Below, piece by piece: positions 6,911 through 34,158 of a stretch of DNA of 64,000 bases. The position numbers were made by a program, and so were the translations under genes. The notes below the pieces were generated by a model. The model had not been told where the DNA came from and did not search any database. It worked only from the letters and a program-made list of their open reading frames with translations. Where the stretch lies: IMG/VR virus record IMGVR_UViG_3300035156_000206, positions 62,001 through 126,000 of that record; one strand, given 5' to 3'. Every line of letters starts with the position of its first letter. Positions within the stretch are counted from its first letter, which is position 1.

Positions 6911-8137
6911 ATGAACGAGCGTCAAATCCAACTGTTTTCACACTTAAAGAACCTCGTCGCAACGACTGAAGTGTTCCTTACAAAAATCCACCAACTCGAT
7001 GACTGTTTCTTCCAGGTATTTGACTACCGCCTGGCTCGATACTCTGACTTCCTGCTGCCTGATGCGCGGGAAGCACGTGGTATCATGTTCGAAGTTGACC
7101 GTGATGGTATGCCTCTGCGGTTGGCTTGCTGGATGCCTTCCAAGTTCTTCAACCTGAACGAAAATCCAATGACGATGGACCTCGACCTGTCTGATGCTAA
7201 CATCAGCGGTGTGATGGAGAAGCTTGATGGTTCAATCATCTCGACGATGATGCACAAAGGCAAGATGATCCTGAAGTCGAAGACCTCCCTGAGCTCAGAG
7301 CACGTCGCAGTGGCACAAGCATACCTCGAAAAGAACTCGTACTTCCGTGAGATCCTAGAATACCCAACAAAGAACGGCTATTCAGTTCACATGGAGCTGA
7401 CAAGTCCCGACCTGCGCATCGTGCTGGGCTACCCAGAAGTAAAGCTGACCATACTGTCGATGCGTCGTCTGTCCGATGGTGCAATGGTGAATCGTCATAA
7501 CTTCTACGATCACTTCCCATGTGATTACCGTGATGGCTTCCAACTTGATCAATGGGTCAAAGATATGGACCCAATTCAGTTTGCTGGTAAGGGCATCCCA
7601 TTTGATAACCAAGTGACTTTGTTCAAGCTGCGAGGCGTCGATCACAATGATACCATGTACGTATCGAAGTTCATTGATGCCATCAAAGCAATGGTAGGCG
7701 TGGAGGGCTACATTGTCCGATTGGTTAATGGTGAACACATCAAGATCAAGTGCGATTGGTACTGTGCATTGCATCACACCAAGGACTCAATCTCTGCACC
7801 CCGCCGTTTGTTTGAATGCATTCTGAATGGTGCTGCTGATGACCTGAAGGCTATGTTTGCAGTTGATCCAATTACGTGTGCACGCATCGTGGAAATGGAA
7901 GACAAGGTTGTTGCAAAATATAACTCGCTTGTCAACAAAGTTGAAACGTTCTACGATAGCAATCGCTCGCTCGATCGTAAGTCATACGCGATTGCAGCTA
8001 CCGCAGAAAAAGAAGACAACCTGATGGGCTTGAAAATGGCTTTGTATTTGGGCAAGACCAACGACTACAAAGAGTTCTTCTTGAAGCACCCAGAGATGTT
8101 TGGCATCAATGCAAAGGATGAAGGTTTCCCAGAATGA
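6911..8137 (+). CDS. rnlA: T4 Rnl1-type RNA ligase
   Basis: KFFNLNE, EKLDGS adenylation motif, EGYIV, KIKCDWY..LH. Confidence 0.92.
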   Translation: MNERQIQLFSHLKNLVATTEVFLTKIHQLDDCFFQVFDYRLARYSDFLLPDAREARGIMFEVDRDGMPLRLACWMPSKFFNLNENPMTMDLDLSDANISGVMEKLDGSIISTMMHKGKMILKSKTSLSSEHVAVAQAYLEKNSYFREILEYPTKNGYSVHMELTSPDLRIVLGYPEVKLTILSMRRLSDGAMVNRHNFYDHFPCDYRDGFQLDQWVKDMDPIQFAGKGIPFDNQVTLFKLRGVDHNDTMYVSKFIDAIKAMVGVEGYIVRLVNGEHIKIKCDWYCALHHTKDSISAPRRLFECILNGAADDLKAMFAVDPITCARIVEMEDKVVAKYNSLVNKVETFYDSNRSLDRKSYAIAATAEKEDNLMGLKMALYLGKTNDYKEFFLKHPEMFGINAKDEGFPE

Positions 8138-10209: not shown

Positions 10210-11346
10210 ATGTCAATGCATCAAGGCTACGTGTGGGATCTCGAAGTACCGCGCCGGATCGGCGATGCCAAGGTGTACATTGTTGGTGGATGGGTCCGAG
10301 ACAAGTTCATGGGTTGTCCATCACAGGACAAGGACTTCCTGGTCGTGGGTGGCACTCATGAACTGATGATCGAGCATGGTTACAAGCAAGTTGGTTTGGA
10401 CTTTCCTGTATACTTGCATCCAGAATCCGGTGATGAGTACGCACTCGCTCGCACTGAACGCAAGACTGGGCCCGGTTACGGTGGCTTCAGTACTGACAGC
10501 TCCCCTACTATTACAGTAGAAGAAGATCTGATGCGCCGTGACTTGACGATCAATGCGATGGCATTGGACCTCGAGACGGGTGAACTTATCGATCCGTGTG
10601 GTGGCCGCCACGACATGAACCGGACGTTCTTGCGCCACACAAGTGATGCATTCATGGAAGATCCAGTTCGCATCCTCCGTACGGCACGATTCGCTGCCCG
10701 CTACAACTTCAACGTTCACAAAACAACTAACGACTTCATGCGTGGCATGGTACTTGCGGGTGCCATGAACGAATTGGAGCCACATCGCGTATGGGCGGAA
10801 ATGTCACGCGGCCTGATGGAACGCAACCCACGCCAACTGTTTCAAGTCCTCGATGACTGTGAAGCACTGCGGGCAATGGAGCATCCGTGGGTTGGTGGCG
10901 TATACGCATCTGGCATCTGGATGACTGGTTACCCACTCAGCCCTCTTACCCTCCCTCAACGGTTCGCATTGATCTCCGAGCACTTCAGCCCAGAAGACTT
11001 GAAGAAGGCCCGTATTCCTACAGATTGCGCGCGGTTGAGTACAATCCTGCACGAATGGAAACACAGCGTTCCATTATATGATCAGGCAACTTCAGACACC
11101 AAGTTGAGGATGTTGGCCGGAGTAGGAGCAATTGGCAAAGATCGTGCCACTGATTTGTTCCCAAGATTCATCAGCACATTCTTGGCATGGGGTGATACAC
11201 GGTTTGATCAATTTCGTATTCCACAGATTGATCGCATGCAAACCCATGCCAATCACATTAACCTCCTTGTGCCACCAGCAGATCTCCCAGTTAAGCGGAT
11301 CCCTGAGTGGATGCTCACATCAAAGCGGGAGATTGTTCGTGGATGA
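10210..11346 (+). CDS. cca: tRNA nucleotidyltransferase (CCA-adding enzyme), no HD domain
   Basis: VGGWVRD, DKDF, DLMRRDLTINAMA, EDPVRILRTARFAAR. Confidence 0.93.
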   Translation: MSMHQGYVWDLEVPRRIGDAKVYIVGGWVRDKFMGCPSQDKDFLVVGGTHELMIEHGYKQVGLDFPVYLHPESGDEYALARTERKTGPGYGGFSTDSSPTITVEEDLMRRDLTINAMALDLETGELIDPCGGRHDMNRTFLRHTSDAFMEDPVRILRTARFAARYNFNVHKTTNDFMRGMVLAGAMNELEPHRVWAEMSRGLMERNPRQLFQVLDDCEALRAMEHPWVGGVYASGIWMTGYPLSPLTLPQRFALISEHFSPEDLKKARIPTDCARLSTILHEWKHSVPLYDQATSDTKLRMLAGVGAIGKDRATDLFPRFISTFLAWGDTRFDQFRIPQIDRMQTHANHINLLVPPADLPVKRIPEWMLTSKREIVRG

Positions 11347-29891: not shown

Positions 29892-30299
29892 ATGGACATG
29901 AACATTTTCGAATTTGCTACCAAGAACAAACTGCGTTTCCCTTCAGCCAAGGGCGATCTGACCGTCGAGCAGCTGTGGGAACTGAAACTGCAATCTGCCG
30001 GCCGCGACGACCTGGACACCATCGCCAAGGGCATCAATGCACAGCTCAAGGCAACCGCCGAAGAAAGCTTCGTTACCACGACTCCGTCGAAGGCTAACGC
30101 CACACTGACGCTGAAGCTGGAAATCCTGAAGCACATCATCGCGGTCAAGAAACAAGAAGAAGCTGACAAGCTGAACAAGGCTGCCAAGGACGTGAAGCGC
30201 CGTACACTCACCGAACTGCTGGGCCGCAAGAACGCCGAGAAGGACGAGCAGATGACGCCAGAGCAAATCATGAAGGAACTGGAAAAGCTGGACGACTAA
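29892..30299 (+). CDS. Conserved helical phage protein
   Basis: NIFE.AT.NKLRFPS.KG.LTVEQLW.L; start reassigned. Confidence 0.8.
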   Translation: MDMNIFEFATKNKLRFPSAKGDLTVEQLWELKLQSAGRDDLDTIAKGINAQLKATAEESFVTTTPSKANATLTLKLEILKHIIAVKKQEEADKLNKAAKDVKRRTLTELLGRKNAEKDEQMTPEQIMKELEKLDD

Positions 30300-30368
30300 G
30301 CTTGCCAGGACCTGGAAGGGAGCCTACGGGCTCTTTTCCTTCTATCTAACAACCTAGTAGGAGATCCC

Positions 30369-30647
30369 ATGGATTTAGACGATGTTACAAATGACCCAAT
30401 GGTCGAAGAACAGAAGCGTAATGCCTCACAAGGTGCCTCAGACTATGTCGAAACTGCCATCGAGGCCGTTGGCGAAGTCATTGGCGTTGGCATCGACGCT
30501 GCTTGTGGCGCTGGGGGAGCAGTTGTTGAATTTGGTGGCGCTCTTATCGGTGGCCTTGCTGATGGTGCAGGGGCTGTACTGGGCGGTGTTGCTGACGCAG
30601 GCGGCGCTATCCTTGAAGGGATCGGATCGATCCTCGGTAACCTGTAA
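30369..30647 (+). CDS. Gly/Ala-rich hypothetical protein
   Basis: SD AGGAG; glycine-zipper-like tail. Confidence 0.65.
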   Translation: MDLDDVTNDPMVEEQKRNASQGASDYVETAIEAVGEVIGVGIDAACGAGGAVVEFGGALIGGLADGAGAVLGGVADAGGAILEGIGSILGNL

Positions 30648-31018
30648 TGTACAAGCAAGTGATCGTGCTGCGCAAAGATTTGAACATGCGCAAGGGCAAG
30701 ATGATAGCCCAGGGGGCCCACGCATCCCATATGGCACTGGGCTTCACCTTTCCGATTGGGTGGAAGCTTTTCAAAAACCTGCGTGTTAAGTTGCGTTGGC
30801 TACGGGACGGGCATAAAAAGATTGCTGTATCTTGCCGAGATAGTGTAGAATTACTAAATATCTACGAAGCTGCCGTAAAGGCGGGGCTTCCGGTATCCTT
30901 TGTTATTGACAATGGGCACACCGAATTCAAAGGTGTAAAGACCAGTACTTGTTTGTGTATTGGTCCTGCACTTTCAACCGAAATTGACAAAATCACGGAA
31001 GATCTGCCACTATTATGA
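30647..31018 (+). CDS. pth2: Peptidyl-tRNA hydrolase 2
   Basis: KQVIVLRKDLNMRKGKMIAQGAHAS, KKIAV, D.GHTE, T.LCIGP, IDKITEDLPLL. Confidence 0.93.
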   Translation: MYKQVIVLRKDLNMRKGKMIAQGAHASHMALGFTFPIGWKLFKNLRVKLRWLRDGHKKIAVSCRDSVELLNIYEAAVKAGLPVSFVIDNGHTEFKGVKTSTCLCIGPALSTEIDKITEDLPLL

Positions 31019-31947
31019 TCAAACGCTTCTTGGGATGCTTCGCCATCCTCGCTACTCTCGCTGCTCCTGCTTCTGCTGCTACTAACGTAGTGAATGGGTG
31101 CGGGTGGAACCATCCTGGAACGAATCCTTACAAGGGTGGTTCCATCAAGGCGTTGGATGACTACACGGACATCCCAGAGTACGCGATGATCAAGCTGAAG
31201 CAGCGCATCGCCAAGGAGCAGTACGACAAGATCGTGGACATCAAGCGCGACAGCATCTCGGGCGGCTTCTTGCCAGAAATCACGGACATGCACTTCGCGG
31301 CCAATACTGTATGCCGCTACGTCAATCGCACCGTGTGGAAGCCTGATCACGTAGAAACGGCCCAAGTATACTGCGAAGGTAAGTACTGCGTATTGATCCC
31401 AAAAGTGTGTGGCAATGTCAGTCGCGTTCGTCCGTTGCCAAAGGTTACTCCGGGAACACGTCCTCCCGTGCTGGTAGTGGTGCCTTTCATCCCGGTTCCT
31501 CCTGTTGATGGAATTGTTCCTCCAGGAAATGAAGTGCCTGTATCGAAGCGACCTGTACCAAATGTGCCGGTCCCACCTCCAACCGTCCCACCATTTCCAA
31601 TGTTTGGTGACCATCCGGTGTTTCCCAGGCCAACCCCAGTGATTCCTAGGCCCGTACCAACACCAACACCAACACCAACACCAACACCAACACCAACACC
31701 AACACCAACACCAACACCAACACCAGTTCCACCGCCGCCTTATGTGCCGCCTCCGCCGCCTTATGTGCCGCCTCCACCGCCTTATGTGCCGCCTCCACCG
31801 CCTTATGTGCCGCCTCCACCGCCTTATGTGCCGCCACCACCGCCTTATGTGCCGCCACCGATACCTGACACACCAACGCCGATACCAGAACCTTCGACGA
31901 TGCTGTTGATGGGACTTGGGGTTGCTATCTTGCTGGCACGCAAATGA
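31015..31947 (+). CDS. PEP-CTERM surface protein, MHFG-like, with Pro-rich repeats
   Basis: Signal peptide; C.W..PG.NPY.G, DMHFA, PKVCGNVSR; C terminus IPEPSTMLLMGLGVAILLARK. Confidence 0.88.
   Translation: MIKRFLGCFAILATLAAPASAATNVVNGCGWNHPGTNPYKGGSIKALDDYTDIPEYAMIKLKQRIAKEQYDKIVDIKRDSISGGFLPEITDMHFAANTVCRYVNRTVWKPDHVETAQVYCEGKYCVLIPKVCGNVSRVRPLPKVTPGTRPPVLVVVPFIPVPPVDGIVPPGNEVPVSKRPVPNVPVPPPTVPPFPMFGDHPVFPRPTPVIPRPVPTPTPTPTPTPTPTPTPTPTPTPVPPPPYVPPPPPYVPPPPPYVPPPPPYVPPPPPYVPPPPPYVPPPIPDTPTPIPEPSTMLLMGLGVAILLARK
31657..31722 (+). repeat. (CCAACA)x11 coding microsatellite encoding (PT)11
   Basis: Eleven perfect hexamers. Confidence 0.95.
31729..31860 (+). repeat. 21-nt coding tandem repeat x6 encoding PPPPPYV
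   Basis: TATGTG recurs every 21 nt at 31741, 31762, 31783, 31804, 31825 and 31846. Confidence 0.95.
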
Positions 31948-32069
31948 GCCGGAACAAGCGAGAAGGCCGCTACTGCGGCTTCTACTCTGATGATGGACGG
32001 CACCATCGCACGGGTGGATGTGGTGTGTCATTAAAGGAATGGTCACGTATGTCTAAGTAACACTCGGCA

Positions 32070-32099
32070 CAAAGAGCTCACTTTGGTGGGCTCTTTTTT
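32070..32099 (+). terminator. Rho-independent terminator
   Basis: AAAGAGCTCAC..GTGGGCTCTTT plus T tract. Confidence 0.85.
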
Positions 32100-32110
32100 C
32101 GTCTGTAGTA

Positions 32111-32235
32111 GGTCCTGTTCTGCCCGGCCTGATGTTTGTTGTATGATCCTGATCTATAAGAGGATCTGTTCATTGTTCTGCTCACTAAATATGTGTTCGC
32201 AGAGAAGGAACATCCAATGAACACAGAACAGGACC
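32111..32235 (+). promoter_or_regulatory. Multi-helix leader with late promoter in its apical loop
   Basis: 12-bp (32111-22/32224-35) and 9-bp (32167-75/32215-23) perfect helices; TAAATA 32186-91 in the loop. Confidence 0.7.
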
Positions 32236-32239
32236 CGTC

Positions 32240-32755
32240 ATGACCTTACTTGAACTATCCCCTCCAGTTAATACCACAGGCACATATGCTGCCGTAACCT
32301 TCTCTCCAAAGACAATCGCTAAGCTTATACGCTTTTGCGAGGAAAACGGCGTAAAGAACGTTTTAAACGCTGACAAATTCCATACAACGCTAATTTACAG
32401 TCGTAAAGAAATGCCAGATTATAAAGCAGCTGGTGACCTAAAAACCAAACTAATCGGTGAGCCTGAAGAGCTGTTGATCTGGAAGACGCGAAGCGAAGAC
32501 AAAGATAAGAAGCCCTCCAACTGCTTGGTATTGAAGTACAAATGTCCGGCCCTGGTGGCACGTCACAATCAGCTGATGAAAGAACATGAAGGCACCTACG
32601 ACTTTGATGAGTTTACTCCACACATCACTCTGTCGTACAATATCGGTGATGATTCGATCGACCATCTCCAAGAGAAGCTGAAGGAGTTTGGGGAGATCGA
32701 GATTGACCACGAGTATACCGAGAAACTAGATCTAAACTGGGCAACGAAAAAATGA
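32240..32755 (+). CDS. acb1: Anti-CBASS nuclease Acb1 (T4 gp57B-like 2H phosphodiesterase)
   Basis: GTYAAV, FHTTLIYSR, LVL....L..RH..L...GTYDFDEFTPHITLSY: two HxT motifs. Confidence 0.9.
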   Translation: MTLLELSPPVNTTGTYAAVTFSPKTIAKLIRFCEENGVKNVLNADKFHTTLIYSRKEMPDYKAAGDLKTKLIGEPEELLIWKTRSEDKDKKPSNCLVLKYKCPALVARHNQLMKEHEGTYDFDEFTPHITLSYNIGDDSIDHLQEKLKEFGEIEIDHEYTEKLDLNWATKK

Positions 32756-33291
32756 TTAAACAACTGAAGGACGTCCACCTGCAAATGATTGTGGCGATGG
32801 ACGAAGGTGGTGGGATTGGTTATCAGGGGATGCTCCCTTGGCCAAAGAACACCAAGGACTTTAAATTTTTCCAGGAGAAAACAAAAGGCTCAATCGTAAT
32901 CATGGGCCGAAAGACATACGAAGAAATTGCACAAATTAATCAACAACGTGGCAAAAAGGACGGCCCACTTCTTCCCAATCGGGTGTCAATTGTCATCTCG
33001 AGTGAAGAAATTGTGAGCGCCTACGAAATTACTGTTGAAAAGTCTCTACTATCCGCTATACAATATCGTATAGAAGAAGATGATAAGCCGGTATTCATCA
33101 TAGGTGGCCTTCAGTTGTACACAGAAGCATTACCGTTTGTGAAGACGTTATATGTGACTGTGTTTAAGGGAACGTACCAATGTGATCGTTATCTTCCGAT
33201 TAAGTACCTTACACAGAACTTTGACATAGTAGAGGGTACGGATGAAAAAGACCTCTACTTCCTGAAACTGAACCGTGTAAAGAACTTGTAA
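32752..33291 (+). CDS. folA: Dihydrofolate reductase
   Basis: IVAMD..GGIG..G.LPW, D.K.F..KT, VIMGRKTYE, LPNR, FIIGG..LY. Confidence 0.95.
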   Translation: MIKQLKDVHLQMIVAMDEGGGIGYQGMLPWPKNTKDFKFFQEKTKGSIVIMGRKTYEEIAQINQQRGKKDGPLLPNRVSIVISSEEIVSAYEITVEKSLLSAIQYRIEEDDKPVFIIGGLQLYTEALPFVKTLYVTVFKGTYQCDRYLPIKYLTQNFDIVEGTDEKDLYFLKLNRVKNL

Positions 33292-33354
33292 TAGGAAGCT
33301 CCTGAAGAAACAAGTGGCGCTGCAACAAACCAAGAAACCTAGAGGAATACGCAA

Positions 33355-34158
33355 ATGAGCAACAGAAATGACATCCGCAGCAAGAACAACGACGATGACG
33401 ACGAAGAGGGTCCAGGCCAGAACCGAGTGCTTATGCAAGTTCAAGCCCCCTTCAAGACATACGAAGCCGTCCGTACCCAGCGTATTACCACGTTTTACCT
33501 GAGCAAGATCATCGGCGATCCTGATCAGTACACTGACATGATCCACAAGATTCGTGTTGCTGCCCCATCAGACATCGTATACATTCACCTGAACACTGGT
33601 GGTGGCCGTCTCGATACCGGCATTCAACTGATCAACGCAATGAAAGATAGTGCTGCTCGCATTATCGCAGTGCTTGATTCAAAGGCCTACTCCCTGGGCA
33701 CTCTCATCTTCCTGGCCGCGGACGAATTCATCGTTCACGACAACTGCATGTTCATGATCCACAACTACTCGTCCGTGACCGGCGGTAAAGGAAATGAGCA
33801 GAAGAGCGAGCTGCTGGCTACGGAAGCCTGGTTCAAAAAGCTCGCGAAGAAGTACTACTTCCCGTTCTTGTCGCACGACGAGATCGATAAGGTACTGAAC
33901 GGCCATGATATTTGGATGGACTCGGACGAAATCAAAAAGCGTCTGAAAAATATGGTCAAGCTGCAAGAAGAAGCAATGGCTGATGCTGATGCACCGAAAG
34001 TCCCACGTCGCCGTCGTGCTGACAAGACCCCTGCGGTGATTTCACTCGAAACCGGCGTGCTGCCAGAGCCAACTACAATTCAAACGACGGCTGGCATTGC
34101 CAGTCCTCCTGCAACACCTCCAACAGTCGTCGCCATTGTTCCTGCAAAGGCGAAGTAA
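33355..34158 (+). CDS. ClpP-like (S14) serine protease
   Basis: LNTGGG, AYSLG (Ser), FMIH (His), HDIW (Asp). Confidence 0.85.
   Translation: MSNRNDIRSKNNDDDDEEGPGQNRVLMQVQAPFKTYEAVRTQRITTFYLSKIIGDPDQYTDMIHKIRVAAPSDIVYIHLNTGGGRLDTGIQLINAMKDSAARIIAVLDSKAYSLGTLIFLAADEFIVHDNCMFMIHNYSSVTGGKGNEQKSELLATEAWFKKLAKKYYFPFLSHDEIDKVLNGHDIWMDSDEIKKRLKNMVKLQEEAMADADAPKVPRRRRADKTPAVISLETGVLPEPTTIQTTAGIASPPATPPTVVAIVPAKAK

What the first reader, a model, noticed from the sequence alone, without database searches (positions are those of the whole stretch)
31015..31947. Phage PEP-CTERM protein with extensin-like repeats: hijack of host exosortase
Seen: signal peptide, MHFG-like domain (DMHFA), (PT)11, (PPPPPYV)6 and a canonical PEP-TM-basic tail; no exosortase in the window. 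Established: PEP-CTERM proteins are sorted by exosortase in EPS-producing Proteobacteria and needed for floc formation; MHFG-type members are typical of Burkholderiales. Inference: the phage displays a protein on the infected cell to alter EPS, floc or adhesion or to mask receptors. The perfect microsatellite may vary stalk length, and the Pro/Tyr repeat resembles plant extensins.
Basis: partly seen in the sequence, partly recalled or inferred. Interest (0 to 1): 0.6.

Follow-up and report, generated by a model that had tools for sequence, protein, structure and literature searches.

The report
Jumbo-phage copy of a bacterial PEP-CTERM protein
A giant soil-crust phage carries its own diverged copy of a bacterial cell-surface protein whose sorting tail needs a host enzyme (exosortase) that the phage lacks. 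It probably redecorates the envelope of the infected cell, but what the protein does is unknown.

Summary
- a Sec-type signal peptide (residues 1-21);
- a ~120-aa MHFG domain (NCBIfam NF038119, 167.8 bits, cut-off 100);
- a 142-aa linker that is 49% proline, with a perfect (PT)11 and six PPPPYV units;
- a PEP-CTERM tail that passes the Pfam and TIGRFAM cut-offs.

The window lies in a 292-kb T4-like jumbo-phage record, probably from a biocrust metagenome. The record has no exosortase and no other PEP-CTERM protein.

The gene is not an artefact or a fresh passenger. A sibling phage contig has a 58%-identical copy at the same position, as conserved as its neighbours. All 25 family-invariant residues (five Cys, M-H-F) are kept. 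An unrelated, complete, temperate 59.9-kb phage also carries an MHFG PEP-CTERM gene without an exosortase. All four MHFG-bearing bacterial genomes checked have 2-3 exosortases.

Use of the host exosortase is therefore plausible but unproven:
- the sibling copy has lost the PEP signal while keeping the membrane anchor;
- the MHFG fold matches nothing solved;
- the host is unidentified;
- repeat-length variation could not be tested, because the only data are contigs that break at the repeats.

The extensin likeness is compositional only. The proposed role on the infected cell's surface is inference.

The parts
31015..31947 (+). Gene for the 310-aa phage MHFG-family PEP-CTERM protein (P0001). Its ATG overlaps the stop of the upstream PTH2 gene (ATGA).
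31015..31077 (+). Signal peptide, residues 1-21 (basic n-region, hydrophobic core, ASA|A)
   Evidence: Sequence inspection; hydrophobicity peak at residues 5-19; aligned with the signal peptides of the family
31096..31452 (+). MHFG domain, residues 28-146. It keeps five invariant Cys (29, 100, 120, 125, 132) and M92-H93-F94. The predicted fold is confident but has no solved relative.
31453..31878 (+). Proline-rich linker or stalk, residues 147-288, 49% Pro. Bacterial relatives have a median of 16% and a maximum of 31%.
31656..31725 (+). Perfect hexanucleotide microsatellite, 11.7 copies, encoding (PT)11 (residues 215-236)
31735..31856 (+). 21-nt tandem array, 5.8 copies, 98% matching, encoding the PPPPYV units (residues 239-280)
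31879..31944 (+). PEP-CTERM sorting tail, residues 289-310: PEP at 291-293, a hydrophobic helix at 294-308, then RK
30647..31018 (+). Upstream co-oriented gene, peptidyl-tRNA hydrolase PTH2 (PF01981, 105 bits). The overlap suggests translational coupling with the MHFG gene. It is absent from the sibling contig.
30369..30647 (+). First ORF of the apparent unit, a 92-aa Gly/Ala-rich protein with no family match. It is conserved (31% identity) just upstream of the MHFG gene in the sibling contig.
30314..30339 (+). Terminator-like hairpin upstream of the unit. The count of such sites in the region is within chance expectation; only the position is suggestive.
32071..32096 (+). Terminator-like hairpin plus T-run, 124 nt after the stop codon of the MHFG gene

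Best explanation
The gene is a bacterial MHFG-family PEP-CTERM surface-protein gene captured by an ancestor of this T4-like jumbo phage. It has been kept as an accessory gene in the replication and anti-defence region.

Proposed mechanism:
1. During infection the protein is made with the neighbouring genes (PTH2 just upstream; Acb1 and DHFR downstream).
2. It is exported by the host Sec system and its signal peptide is removed.
3. Its C-terminal helix first holds it in the inner membrane, with the MHFG domain in the periplasm at the end of a stiff proline-rich stalk.
4. The host's exosortase then recognises the PEP-CTERM tail, cuts it, and passes the protein to the outer envelope or EPS layer.
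5. There the phage version of the MHFG domain adds to or replaces the host's own. This changes how EPS is held on the infected cell, for example a denser bound layer that blocks further phage adsorption or keeps the cell in its aggregate.

Shown: the domain architecture, family membership, phage carriage, conservation in a sibling phage, recurrence in an unrelated temperate phage, the lack of a phage exosortase, and the presence of exosortases in bacteria that carry the family.

Inferred: timing of expression, Sec export, cleavage by exosortase, surface location, and the benefit to the phage.
For: Family membership and sorting signal:
- NF038119 at 167.8 bits (cut-off 100); PF07589 and TIGR02595 both above cut-off.
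- A tail HMM built from 64 distinct tails of bacterial (metagenomic) MHFG proteins scores the window's tail at 22.7 bits. The bacterial controls, which were part of the training set, score 34-48.
- All 25 residues invariant across 70 domains are kept, including 5 Cys and M-H-F.

Phage context:
- Window genes match phage families. The record is a 292-kb virus record.
- Both halves of the gene are contiguous with the phage flanks in independent Logan contigs of equal depth, 10.6 and 11.6.

Retention in the phage lineage:
- The sibling contig L005 (46% GC) has the same gene order. Its MHFG copy is 58% identical, against 57-66% for phrog_1735, Acb1 and DHFR.
- The two copies are sisters in the tree, support 98.

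Lineage-specific accessory gene:
- 55 more distant IMG/VR phages were fetched through phrog_1735; 50 of them also match phrog_2018. None has an MHFG domain or a PEP-type tail within 7 kb.

Recurrence:
- L019/G403 is a complete 59,932-bp phage with terminal repeats, an integrase, PolA, DUF2800 and a primase.
- It carries an MHFG PEP-CTERM gene (216 bits; PF07589 24.7 bits) and no exosortase.

Host machinery:
- 4 of 4 MHFG-bearing bacterial genomes have 2-3 EpsH exosortases above cut-off.

Literature:
- Exosortase deletion changes which PEP-CTERM proteins reach the exoproteome, and abolishes biofilm formation (PMC12188702).
- Overexpressing a PEP-CTERM protein in the Burkholderiales bacterium Aquincola shifts EPS from soluble to cell-bound and rescues flocs (PMC9850573).
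Against: - The sibling phage's copy has no detectable PEP-CTERM signal: no TIGR02595 or Pfam hit, and -5.2 bits with the family tail HMM. At the aligned position PEP reads PIP. It still keeps a C-terminal hydrophobic helix and basic end. In this phage lineage, therefore, the conserved features are the anchor and the domain, not the exosortase signal.
- The window's tail scores well below bacterial tails. It lacks the family-typical T-W-A after PEP and ends in only two basic residues.
- The host is unknown, so the presence of an exosortase in it is assumed.
- The G of MHFG is replaced by A, and 9 of 49 highly conserved positions differ (bacterial maximum 6). The biochemical activity may have shifted.
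- The function of the MHFG domain is unknown in any organism. There is no PDB or viral fold match and no paper on it.
- There are no expression data: no RNA run holds the sequence.
Confidence: 0.5

Rival explanations
1. The protein is an exosortase-independent membrane-anchored periplasmic protein. The C-terminal helix is simply a permanent inner-membrane anchor. The polyproline stalk could reach up to about 40 nm if fully extended (my estimate from about 3 Å per residue). It would hold the MHFG domain across the periplasm against the peptidoglycan or outer membrane, where it acts on an envelope component. The PEP motif would be a leftover of its bacterial origin.
For: - The sibling copy keeps the signal peptide, the domain, a Pro-rich linker and a C-terminal helix with a basic end, but has lost the PEP signal.
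- The window's tail scores weakly against the family tail model (22.7 bits, against 34-48 for the bacterial controls).
- The proline content of the stalk lies outside the range of all 68 relatives with a measurable linker (0.49 against a maximum of 0.31). This suggests a new mechanical role.
Against: - The window's tail still passes two curated PEP-CTERM models.
- So does the tail of the unrelated phage L019.
- A pure anchor would be under no selection to keep P-E-P directly before the helix.
Confidence: 0.25
2. The protein is a decoy or dominant-negative. It competes with host PEP-CTERM proteins for exosortase, or with the host's own MHFG protein for its partner. This loosens the tethering of EPS so that infected cells or progeny escape the matrix.
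For: - The domain keeps all invariant residues but is the most diverged member of the family.
- The tail is atypical in the window's copy and degenerate in the sibling.
- PEP-CTERM proteins control the balance of bound and soluble EPS (PMC9850573).
Against: There is no direct evidence. The temperate phage L019 carries a near-typical copy (71% identical to a bacterial one, 2 of 49 conserved positions changed). That fits gain of function better than interference.
Confidence: 0.1
3. The gene is a neutral passenger from a horizontal transfer, with no role for the phage.
For: - It is a lineage-specific accessory gene in a variable spot.
- Its GC is higher than the genome's: 55.7% for the gene and 53.8% for the domain, against 48.4%.
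Against: - It is retained in two phages that have diverged to about 57-66% identity in neighbouring genes, and it is just as conserved as they are.
- All 25 invariant residues are intact and the frame is intact.
Confidence: 0.07
4. The gene is an assembly chimera or bacterial contamination, or it encodes a lysis or virion protein such as a unimolecular spanin.
For: - The repeats break short-read contigs.
- The topology (N-terminal signal plus C-terminal helix) resembles that of a u-spanin.
Against: - Each half of the gene is joined to phage flanks in 13-kb contigs of equal depth.
- The same arrangement is seen in an independent sample.
- There is no lipobox: the Cys at residue 8 lies inside the hydrophobic core and the cleavage site is ASA|A.
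- The gene sits among replication genes, not in a lysis or structural module.
Confidence: 0.03

Closest known systems
MHFG family PEP-CTERM proteins of Burkholderiales (NCBIfam NF038119), e.g. the Roseateles MAG protein at L006:1498-2334(-)
   Same: - Signal peptide and the ~120-aa domain with every invariant residue (C-x-W-N/D-x-P-G ... D-M-H-F ... C-x-N-V-S-R).
- A low-complexity linker.
- A PEP-CTERM tail.
- The HMM score is above the curated cut-off.
   Different: - It is encoded by a virus with no exosortase.
- It is only 32-35% identical to the bacterial members over the full length and 40-50% over the domain.
- It sits with its sibling on a long separate branch.
- MHFG reads MHFA.
- The linker is 49% Pro with perfect tandem repeats, instead of Ala/Gly-rich.
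- The tail lacks the T-W-A that follows PEP in the family.
- The bacterial genes are chromosomal, next to uvrA.
Flocculation PEP-CTERM protein PepA and the exosortase system (Zoogloea, Aquincola; PMC9850573) and cyanoexosortase B substrates (PMC12188702)
   Same: The same class of C-terminal sorting signal. The expected route is Sec export, exosortase processing, then association with EPS.
   Different: There is no sequence relation outside the tail: floc_PepA NF033554 scores 9.7 bits against a cut-off of 80. No processing or phenotype data exist for any MHFG protein.
Phage-encoded envelope proteins that use host sorting machinery (lipoproteins such as T5 Llp or lambdoid Cor/Bor; from my own knowledge)
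   Same: The concept is the same: a phage gene whose product is matured by a host envelope pathway and changes the infected or lysogenised cell's surface, often for superinfection exclusion.
   Different: Those use the Lgt/Lsp lipoprotein pathway. Here the pathway would be exosortase, for which I found no functionally studied phage substrate. Only passing metagenomic mentions turned up: a PEP-CTERM domain in a Dehalococcoides virus-like element (bioRxiv 10.64898/2026.09.15.751708) and TIGR03118-family proteins in hot-spring viruses (PMC11003980).
Plant extensins, and bacterial Pro-Thr linkers or the TonB Pro-rich spacer (from my own knowledge)
   Same: Runs of proline with Tyr and Val, giving an extended polyproline-II-like rod.
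   Different: There is no Ser-Pro4 unit and no extensin family match, so the likeness is compositional convergence. (PT)n is a classic bacterial interdomain linker.

Membership tests
MHFG family PEP-CTERM protein (NF038119) | Score above the curated whole-protein cut-off of the equivalog HMM (100 bits) | tested here: met
   167.8 bits, E 5.6e-49. The same result was obtained on the genome (168.5 bits).
MHFG family PEP-CTERM protein (NF038119) | Conserved residues of the domain, including the MHFG motif | tested here: inconclusive
   All 25 columns invariant across 70 domains are kept (5 Cys, W31, M92-H93-F94 and others). However, the motif's G is A, and 9 of 49 columns that are at least 90% conserved differ, more than in any bacterial member.
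MHFG family PEP-CTERM protein (NF038119) | Match along the full 260-position model (domain, linker and tail) | tested here: not met
   The best stretch covers only model positions 3-123, and the call reports two matched stretches in all. The linker is unrelated in composition. Bacterial members match positions 2-260.
MHFG family PEP-CTERM protein (NF038119) | N-terminal signal peptide | tested here: met
   Tested by inspection and hydrophobicity only. It aligns with the family's signal peptides. No dedicated predictor was available.
PEP-CTERM / exosortase substrates | C-terminal PEP motif, transmembrane helix and basic cluster recognised by the curated models | tested here: met
   PF07589 at 28.6 bits (cut-off 20.7); TIGR02595 at 20.8 bits (cut-off 16). 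The family-specific tail HMM gives 22.7 bits.
PEP-CTERM / exosortase substrates | An exosortase (EpsH/Xrt) encoded in the same genome | tested here: not met
   No TIGR02602 or PF09721 match in the 292-kb record, which is 84% complete. The enzyme would have to come from the host, which is unidentified. The four MHFG-bearing bacterial genomes each have 2-3.
PEP-CTERM / exosortase substrates | Cleavage at PEP and export that depend on exosortase | not testable with these tools
   This needs expression in a host with and without exosortase.
Plant extensins / hydroxyproline-rich glycoproteins | Ser-(Hyp)4 repeats and sequence-family membership | tested here: not met
   The units are PPPPPYV and PT, with no Ser-Pro4. 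The Pfam scan at E up to 10 returns only PEP-CTERM.
Unimolecular spanin (T1 gp11 type) | N-terminal lipoprotein signal with a lipobox Cys, a C-terminal transmembrane helix, and a position in the lysis cassette | tested here: not met
   There is no lipobox and the cleavage site is ASA|A. The neighbours are replication and anti-defence genes.

The most novel reading that the evidence does not exclude
Phages of EPS- and floc-forming Burkholderiales-like bacteria repeatedly carry substrates of the host exosortase pathway. Examples are a lytic-type jumbo phage with a polyproline-stalked version and a temperate 60-kb phage with a near-bacterial version. They would use them to rewrite the protein and EPS coat of the infected or lysogenised cell. 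This would be the first virus-encoded exosortase substrates with a function. It would also give a handle on what the uncharacterised MHFG domain does.
Probability: 0.35. Interest if true: 0.65.

Novelty: new variant of a known kind. Interest (0 to 1): 0.45.

Why it matters
PEP-CTERM/exosortase sorting governs how many environmental bacteria hold their EPS, form flocs and build biofilms, which matters for activated sludge, soil crusts and symbioses. Almost no substrate has a known activity, and no viral player is known. A phage-borne substrate would show that viruses intervene in this pathway:
- it is conserved in a sibling phage;
- it recurs in an unrelated temperate phage;
- it always lacks its own exosortase.

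It also offers a compact test system of one gene plus one host enzyme. The high-confidence model of the MHFG domain has no match among solved structures, which marks it as a target for structural work. If the gene is merely an anchored periplasmic protein, the finding is a modest accessory-gene annotation.

Tried and rejected
Searches that found no relative:
- tblastn of the domain against 50,697 deposited phages: no match.
- PHROGs: no family.
- Single-protein pattern scan of IMG/VR: none. Only the alignment-based scan found L019.
- Acb1-based scan for further sibling phages: none.
- Word search of 5.8 billion protein clusters: only the sibling copy.
- L019-like phage genes among the 80 metagenome loci: none.

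Tools deliberately not used:
- The family scan had already settled identity, and the metagenome scan gave 154 relatives.

Host identification:
- The best deposited-phage relatives of a core gene are only ~44% identical and come from Caulobacter and enterobacterial phages.
- All bacterial MHFG loci have 58-74% GC and are at most ~50% identical. No donor or host can be named.

One or two captures:
- The free tree puts L019 among bacterial sequences and the jumbo pair outside them.
- The AU test does not reject all three phage copies forming one clade (p 0.69). Independent capture is therefore not demonstrated. What is shown is only that the two phage backbones are unrelated.

Fold searches:
- PDB Foldseek: best E 0.34.
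- VIA-align wide: best Z 4.3, generic SH3/Tudor-like barrels.
- BFVD: none.
- ESM Atlas: only the family itself (TM 0.94).

Repeat-length variation:
- The one holding run is kept as contigs that stop at the arrays.
- One 88-nt, low-depth unitig sits either one repeat unit out of register or one base different. I could not tell which, and I do not count it as evidence.

Bacterial gene neighbourhood (uvrA, an orphan response-regulator receiver and a SWIB-like protein by inspection): no functional clue.
Full report
**1. What is in the sequence**

The + strand ORF 31015..31947 encodes 310 aa. Its ATG overlaps the TGA of the upstream PTH2 gene (ATGA).

- Residues 1-21 have the form of a Sec signal peptide (MIKR, a hydrophobic core, ASA|A). 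This stretch and residues 294-308 are the only hydrophobic peaks.
- NCBIfam places the protein in NF038119, 'MHFG family PEP-CTERM protein': 167.8 bits against a curated cut-off of 100, residues 28-146.
- The tail passes TIGR02595 (20.8 bits, cut-off 16) and Pfam PF07589 (28.6 bits, cut-off 20.7).
- Between domain and tail lie 142 residues that are 49% proline. They include (PT)11 at residues 215-236 and six PPPPYV cores at residues 239-280.
- At the DNA level these are a 100% perfect 6-nt array of 11.7 copies (31656-31725) and a 98% matching 21-nt array of 5.8 copies (31735-31856).
- Both unit sizes are multiples of three. Slippage would therefore alter length, never the frame.

The 394-aa ORF on the opposite strand (30862..32046) has no support and I take it as a by-product of the repeats.

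**2. The carrier is a phage without an exosortase**

The window is bases 62001-126000 of a 291,967-bp IMG/VR virus record. The record is linear and 84% complete by CheckV.

- Window genes match phage families for NAD-dependent ligase, PolB, topoisomerase II, ribonucleotide reductase, DnaB helicase, primase, RNA ligase, NAMPT, CCA-adding enzyme, DHFR and a ClpP-like protease.
- The whole record has no EpsH/exosortase match (TIGR02602, PF09721).
- It has no integrase.
- This is its single PEP-CTERM match.
- The only public run holding the region is a biocrust metagenome, probably the source sample.
- Its Logan contigs join 30000-31647 and 31806-33500 to about 13 kb of phage sequence each, at equal depth (10.6 and 11.6). 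They break exactly at the two arrays.

The gene is therefore not a chimera. Its repeat copy numbers, however, rest on the original assembly.

**3. It is a retained gene, not a stray**

A word search of 5.8 billion protein clusters found one relative, P0002 (215 aa, 58% identical). P0002 lies on a 3.4-kb contig of 46% GC from another sample (L005).

- The gene order there is the same: the end of phrog_1735, a 45-aa ORF, phrog_2018, a Gly/Ala-rich ORF, MHFG, Acb1, DHFR.
- The MHFG copy (58%) is as conserved as phrog_1735 (57%), Acb1 (59%) and DHFR (66%).
- 55 more distant IMG/VR phages were fetched through phrog_1735; 50 of them also match phrog_2018. None has an MHFG domain or a PEP-type tail within 7 kb. 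The gene is thus an accessory insertion specific to this small lineage.
- Across 70 aligned domains, 25 columns are invariant: C29, W31, P34, G35, M92-H93-F94, C100, C120, C125, C132, N134, S136, R137 and others. Both jumbo-phage copies keep all of them.
- The two copies are nevertheless the most diverged members. 9 and 10 of 49 highly conserved columns are changed, against a bacterial median of 0 and a maximum of 6. Shared changes such as S-to-G, D-to-N and Y-to-F mark a common ancestor.
- In the tree they are sisters (support 98) on a long stem outside all bacterial sequences.

**4. Relatives elsewhere**

- A scan of 241 million metagenome records gave 154 relatives. The best 80 are 29-50% identical (best segment) and all have 58-74% GC, which marks them as bacterial.
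- 34 of the 80 loci match uvrA, which lies next to the MHFG gene in the reference locus L003.
- The family is sparse. It is above cut-off in 4 of 401 genomes sampled from the order of a Roseateles MAG.
- All four of those genomes carry 2-3 exosortases above cut-off.
- The alignment-based IMG/VR scan found a third phage copy in L019/G403. This is a complete 59,932-bp phage with direct terminal repeats and 64.6% GC. It has a tyrosine integrase, PolA, DUF2800 and a PriCT/DUF5906 primase, and no exosortase.
- Its protein scores 216 bits on NF038119, passes the PEP-CTERM models, is 71% identical to a bacterial member, and differs at only 2 of 49 conserved columns.

Two unrelated phage backbones therefore carry the family. 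Whether it was captured once or twice is unresolved: the free tree separates them, but the AU test does not reject a single clade (p 0.69).

**5. How firm is the exosortase link?**

For:
- The window's tail and L019's tail pass the curated models.
- The bacteria that carry the family have exosortases.
- The phages have none, so any processing must use the host enzyme.

Against:
- The sibling's tail fails TIGR02595 and Pfam.
- With an HMM built from 64 bacterial MHFG tails, the training-set controls score 34-48 bits, L019 24.4, the window 22.7 and the sibling -5.2.
- At the aligned position the sibling reads P-I-P, yet it keeps a hydrophobic helix and a basic end.

What this phage lineage conserves is therefore signal peptide, domain, Pro-rich linker and C-terminal anchor. 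The PEP signal is intact in the window's copy but is evidently dispensable in its sibling.

**6. The domain and the stalk**

- AlphaFold2 on the 70-sequence alignment gives a confident model: pLDDT 92.5, pTM 0.85, two helices and a sheet or barrel of seven strands.
- It matches nothing solved (Foldseek best E 0.34; VIA-align best Z 4.3, generic SH3/Tudor-like barrels).
- It matches nothing in predicted viral structures.
- In the ESM Atlas it matches only its own family (TM 0.94 to a 197-member cluster, 89% with PEP-CTERM, mostly Pseudomonadota).
- No paper mentions the family.
- Five invariant Cys plus an invariant His in an exported domain suggest disulfides plus a free thiol or a metal site. 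That is inference; I could not inspect the coordinates.
- The linker of bacterial members has a median length of 116 aa with 16% Pro (maximum 31%) and 33% Ala+Gly. The window's linker is 49% Pro, outside the range of all 68 relatives with a measurable linker. The sibling's linker is only about 45 aa, without repeats.
- Stalk length and stiffness therefore vary between lineages. Variation within the population could not be tested.
- The extensin likeness is compositional: no Ser-Pro4 unit and no family hit.

**7. Mechanism proposed**

The protein is exported by Sec and tethered by the C-terminal helix. In a host with exosortase it is cleaved at PEP and passed to the outer envelope or EPS layer. 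There, an extra MHFG domain on a rigid stalk alters how EPS is held.

- Published work shows that exosortase loss changes which PEP-CTERM proteins reach the exoproteome and abolishes biofilm formation (PMC12188702).
- Overproducing one PEP-CTERM protein in a Burkholderiales bacterium shifts EPS from soluble to cell-bound and restores flocs (PMC9850573).
- A phage-driven shift of this kind could hinder adsorption of competing phages or keep the infected cell inside a dense host aggregate.
- The gene's place in a co-oriented block, just upstream of an Acb1 anti-CBASS homologue, fits expression with the non-structural genes. The block is bracketed by terminator-like hairpins at 30314-30339 and 32071-32096. 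The hairpin count is within chance expectation.
- All steps after translation are inferred.

The main rival is a permanent inner-membrane anchor with a periplasm-spanning stalk, independent of exosortase. The sibling's degenerate tail favours that rival.

**8. Verdict**

Identity (a phage-borne MHFG PEP-CTERM protein with no phage exosortase) is well supported. Hijack of the host exosortase is plausible but unproven, and it is not conserved in the nearest relative. The functional story is hypothesis. The Oxalobacteraceae host and the extensin analogy are unsupported.

I found only passing metagenomic mentions of PEP-CTERM domains in viral or virus-like elements (bioRxiv 10.64898/2026.09.15.751708; PMC11003980). 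None has been functionally studied.

Noticed in passing
window:32240-32755 (+): A 171-aa 2H-phosphoesterase matches Pfam Acb1 (anti-CBASS, PF23474) at 116.8 bits and phrog_755. It is conserved at 59% identity in the sibling contig. It is probably a cyclic-nucleotide-degrading counter-defence gene, about 290 nt downstream of the MHFG gene.
   Followed up: partly
window:30647-31018 (+): A phage-encoded peptidyl-tRNA hydrolase PTH2 (PF01981, 105 bits). Its stop overlaps the MHFG start (ATGA). It is absent from the sibling contig, so this spot gains and loses genes.
   Followed up: partly
window:30369-30647 (+): A 92-aa Gly/Ala-rich ORF with no family match. It is conserved at 31% identity directly upstream of the MHFG gene in the sibling phage. 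It may be a membrane-active partner or unrelated.
   Followed up: no
window:27718-29739 (+): A 673-aa protein of unknown function (phrog_1735, 794 bits). It is found in 552 deposited phage records of very different hosts (Caulobacter, Klebsiella, Salmonella, Bacillus) at about 44% identity or less. Some depositors annotate it as an RNA polymerase or a DUF2135 protein.
   Followed up: partly
G000:C1:291869-291967 (outside the window): The virus record ends inside a perfect (TGGCGT)16.5 microsatellite. The contig end is therefore probably an assembly break at a repeat, consistent with 84% completeness.
   Followed up: no
G000:C1:229200-230630 and 166251-166318 (outside the window): Several 27/36-nt repeats of GGT-CCx-xxx type (collagen-like Gly-X-Y), as seen in some phage fibre proteins.
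   Followed up: no
window:225-1862, 6911-8137, 10210-11346 (+): NAMPT, a T4 Rnl-like RNA ligase and a tRNA nucleotidyltransferase. This is an NAD-salvage and tRNA-repair set, as in other large phages.
   Followed up: no
L019:7809-8675 (IMGVR_UViG_3300032322_001991): A complete temperate 59.9-kb phage carries a near-bacterial MHFG PEP-CTERM gene. It lies between a DUF2800/PolA block and a YdcK beta-solenoid protein. It is a candidate lysogenic-conversion gene.
   Followed up: partly
L003:6910-7824 (Roseateles MAG): In the Roseateles MAG locus L003 the MHFG gene is flanked by uvrA (convergent) and, upstream, by an orphan response-regulator receiver and a small AKKA-repeat/SWIB-like protein. Only uvrA was checked in other loci (34 of the 80 match it); the two upstream genes were identified by inspection only.
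   Followed up: partly
window:31753-31806: An 88-nt Logan unitig at depth 4.8 (the flanks are at about 11) links the end of the PT microsatellite to the 21-nt array. It is either one unit out of register or carries one base change. This is a possible minor variant, but it is unresolvable from contigs.
   Followed up: partly
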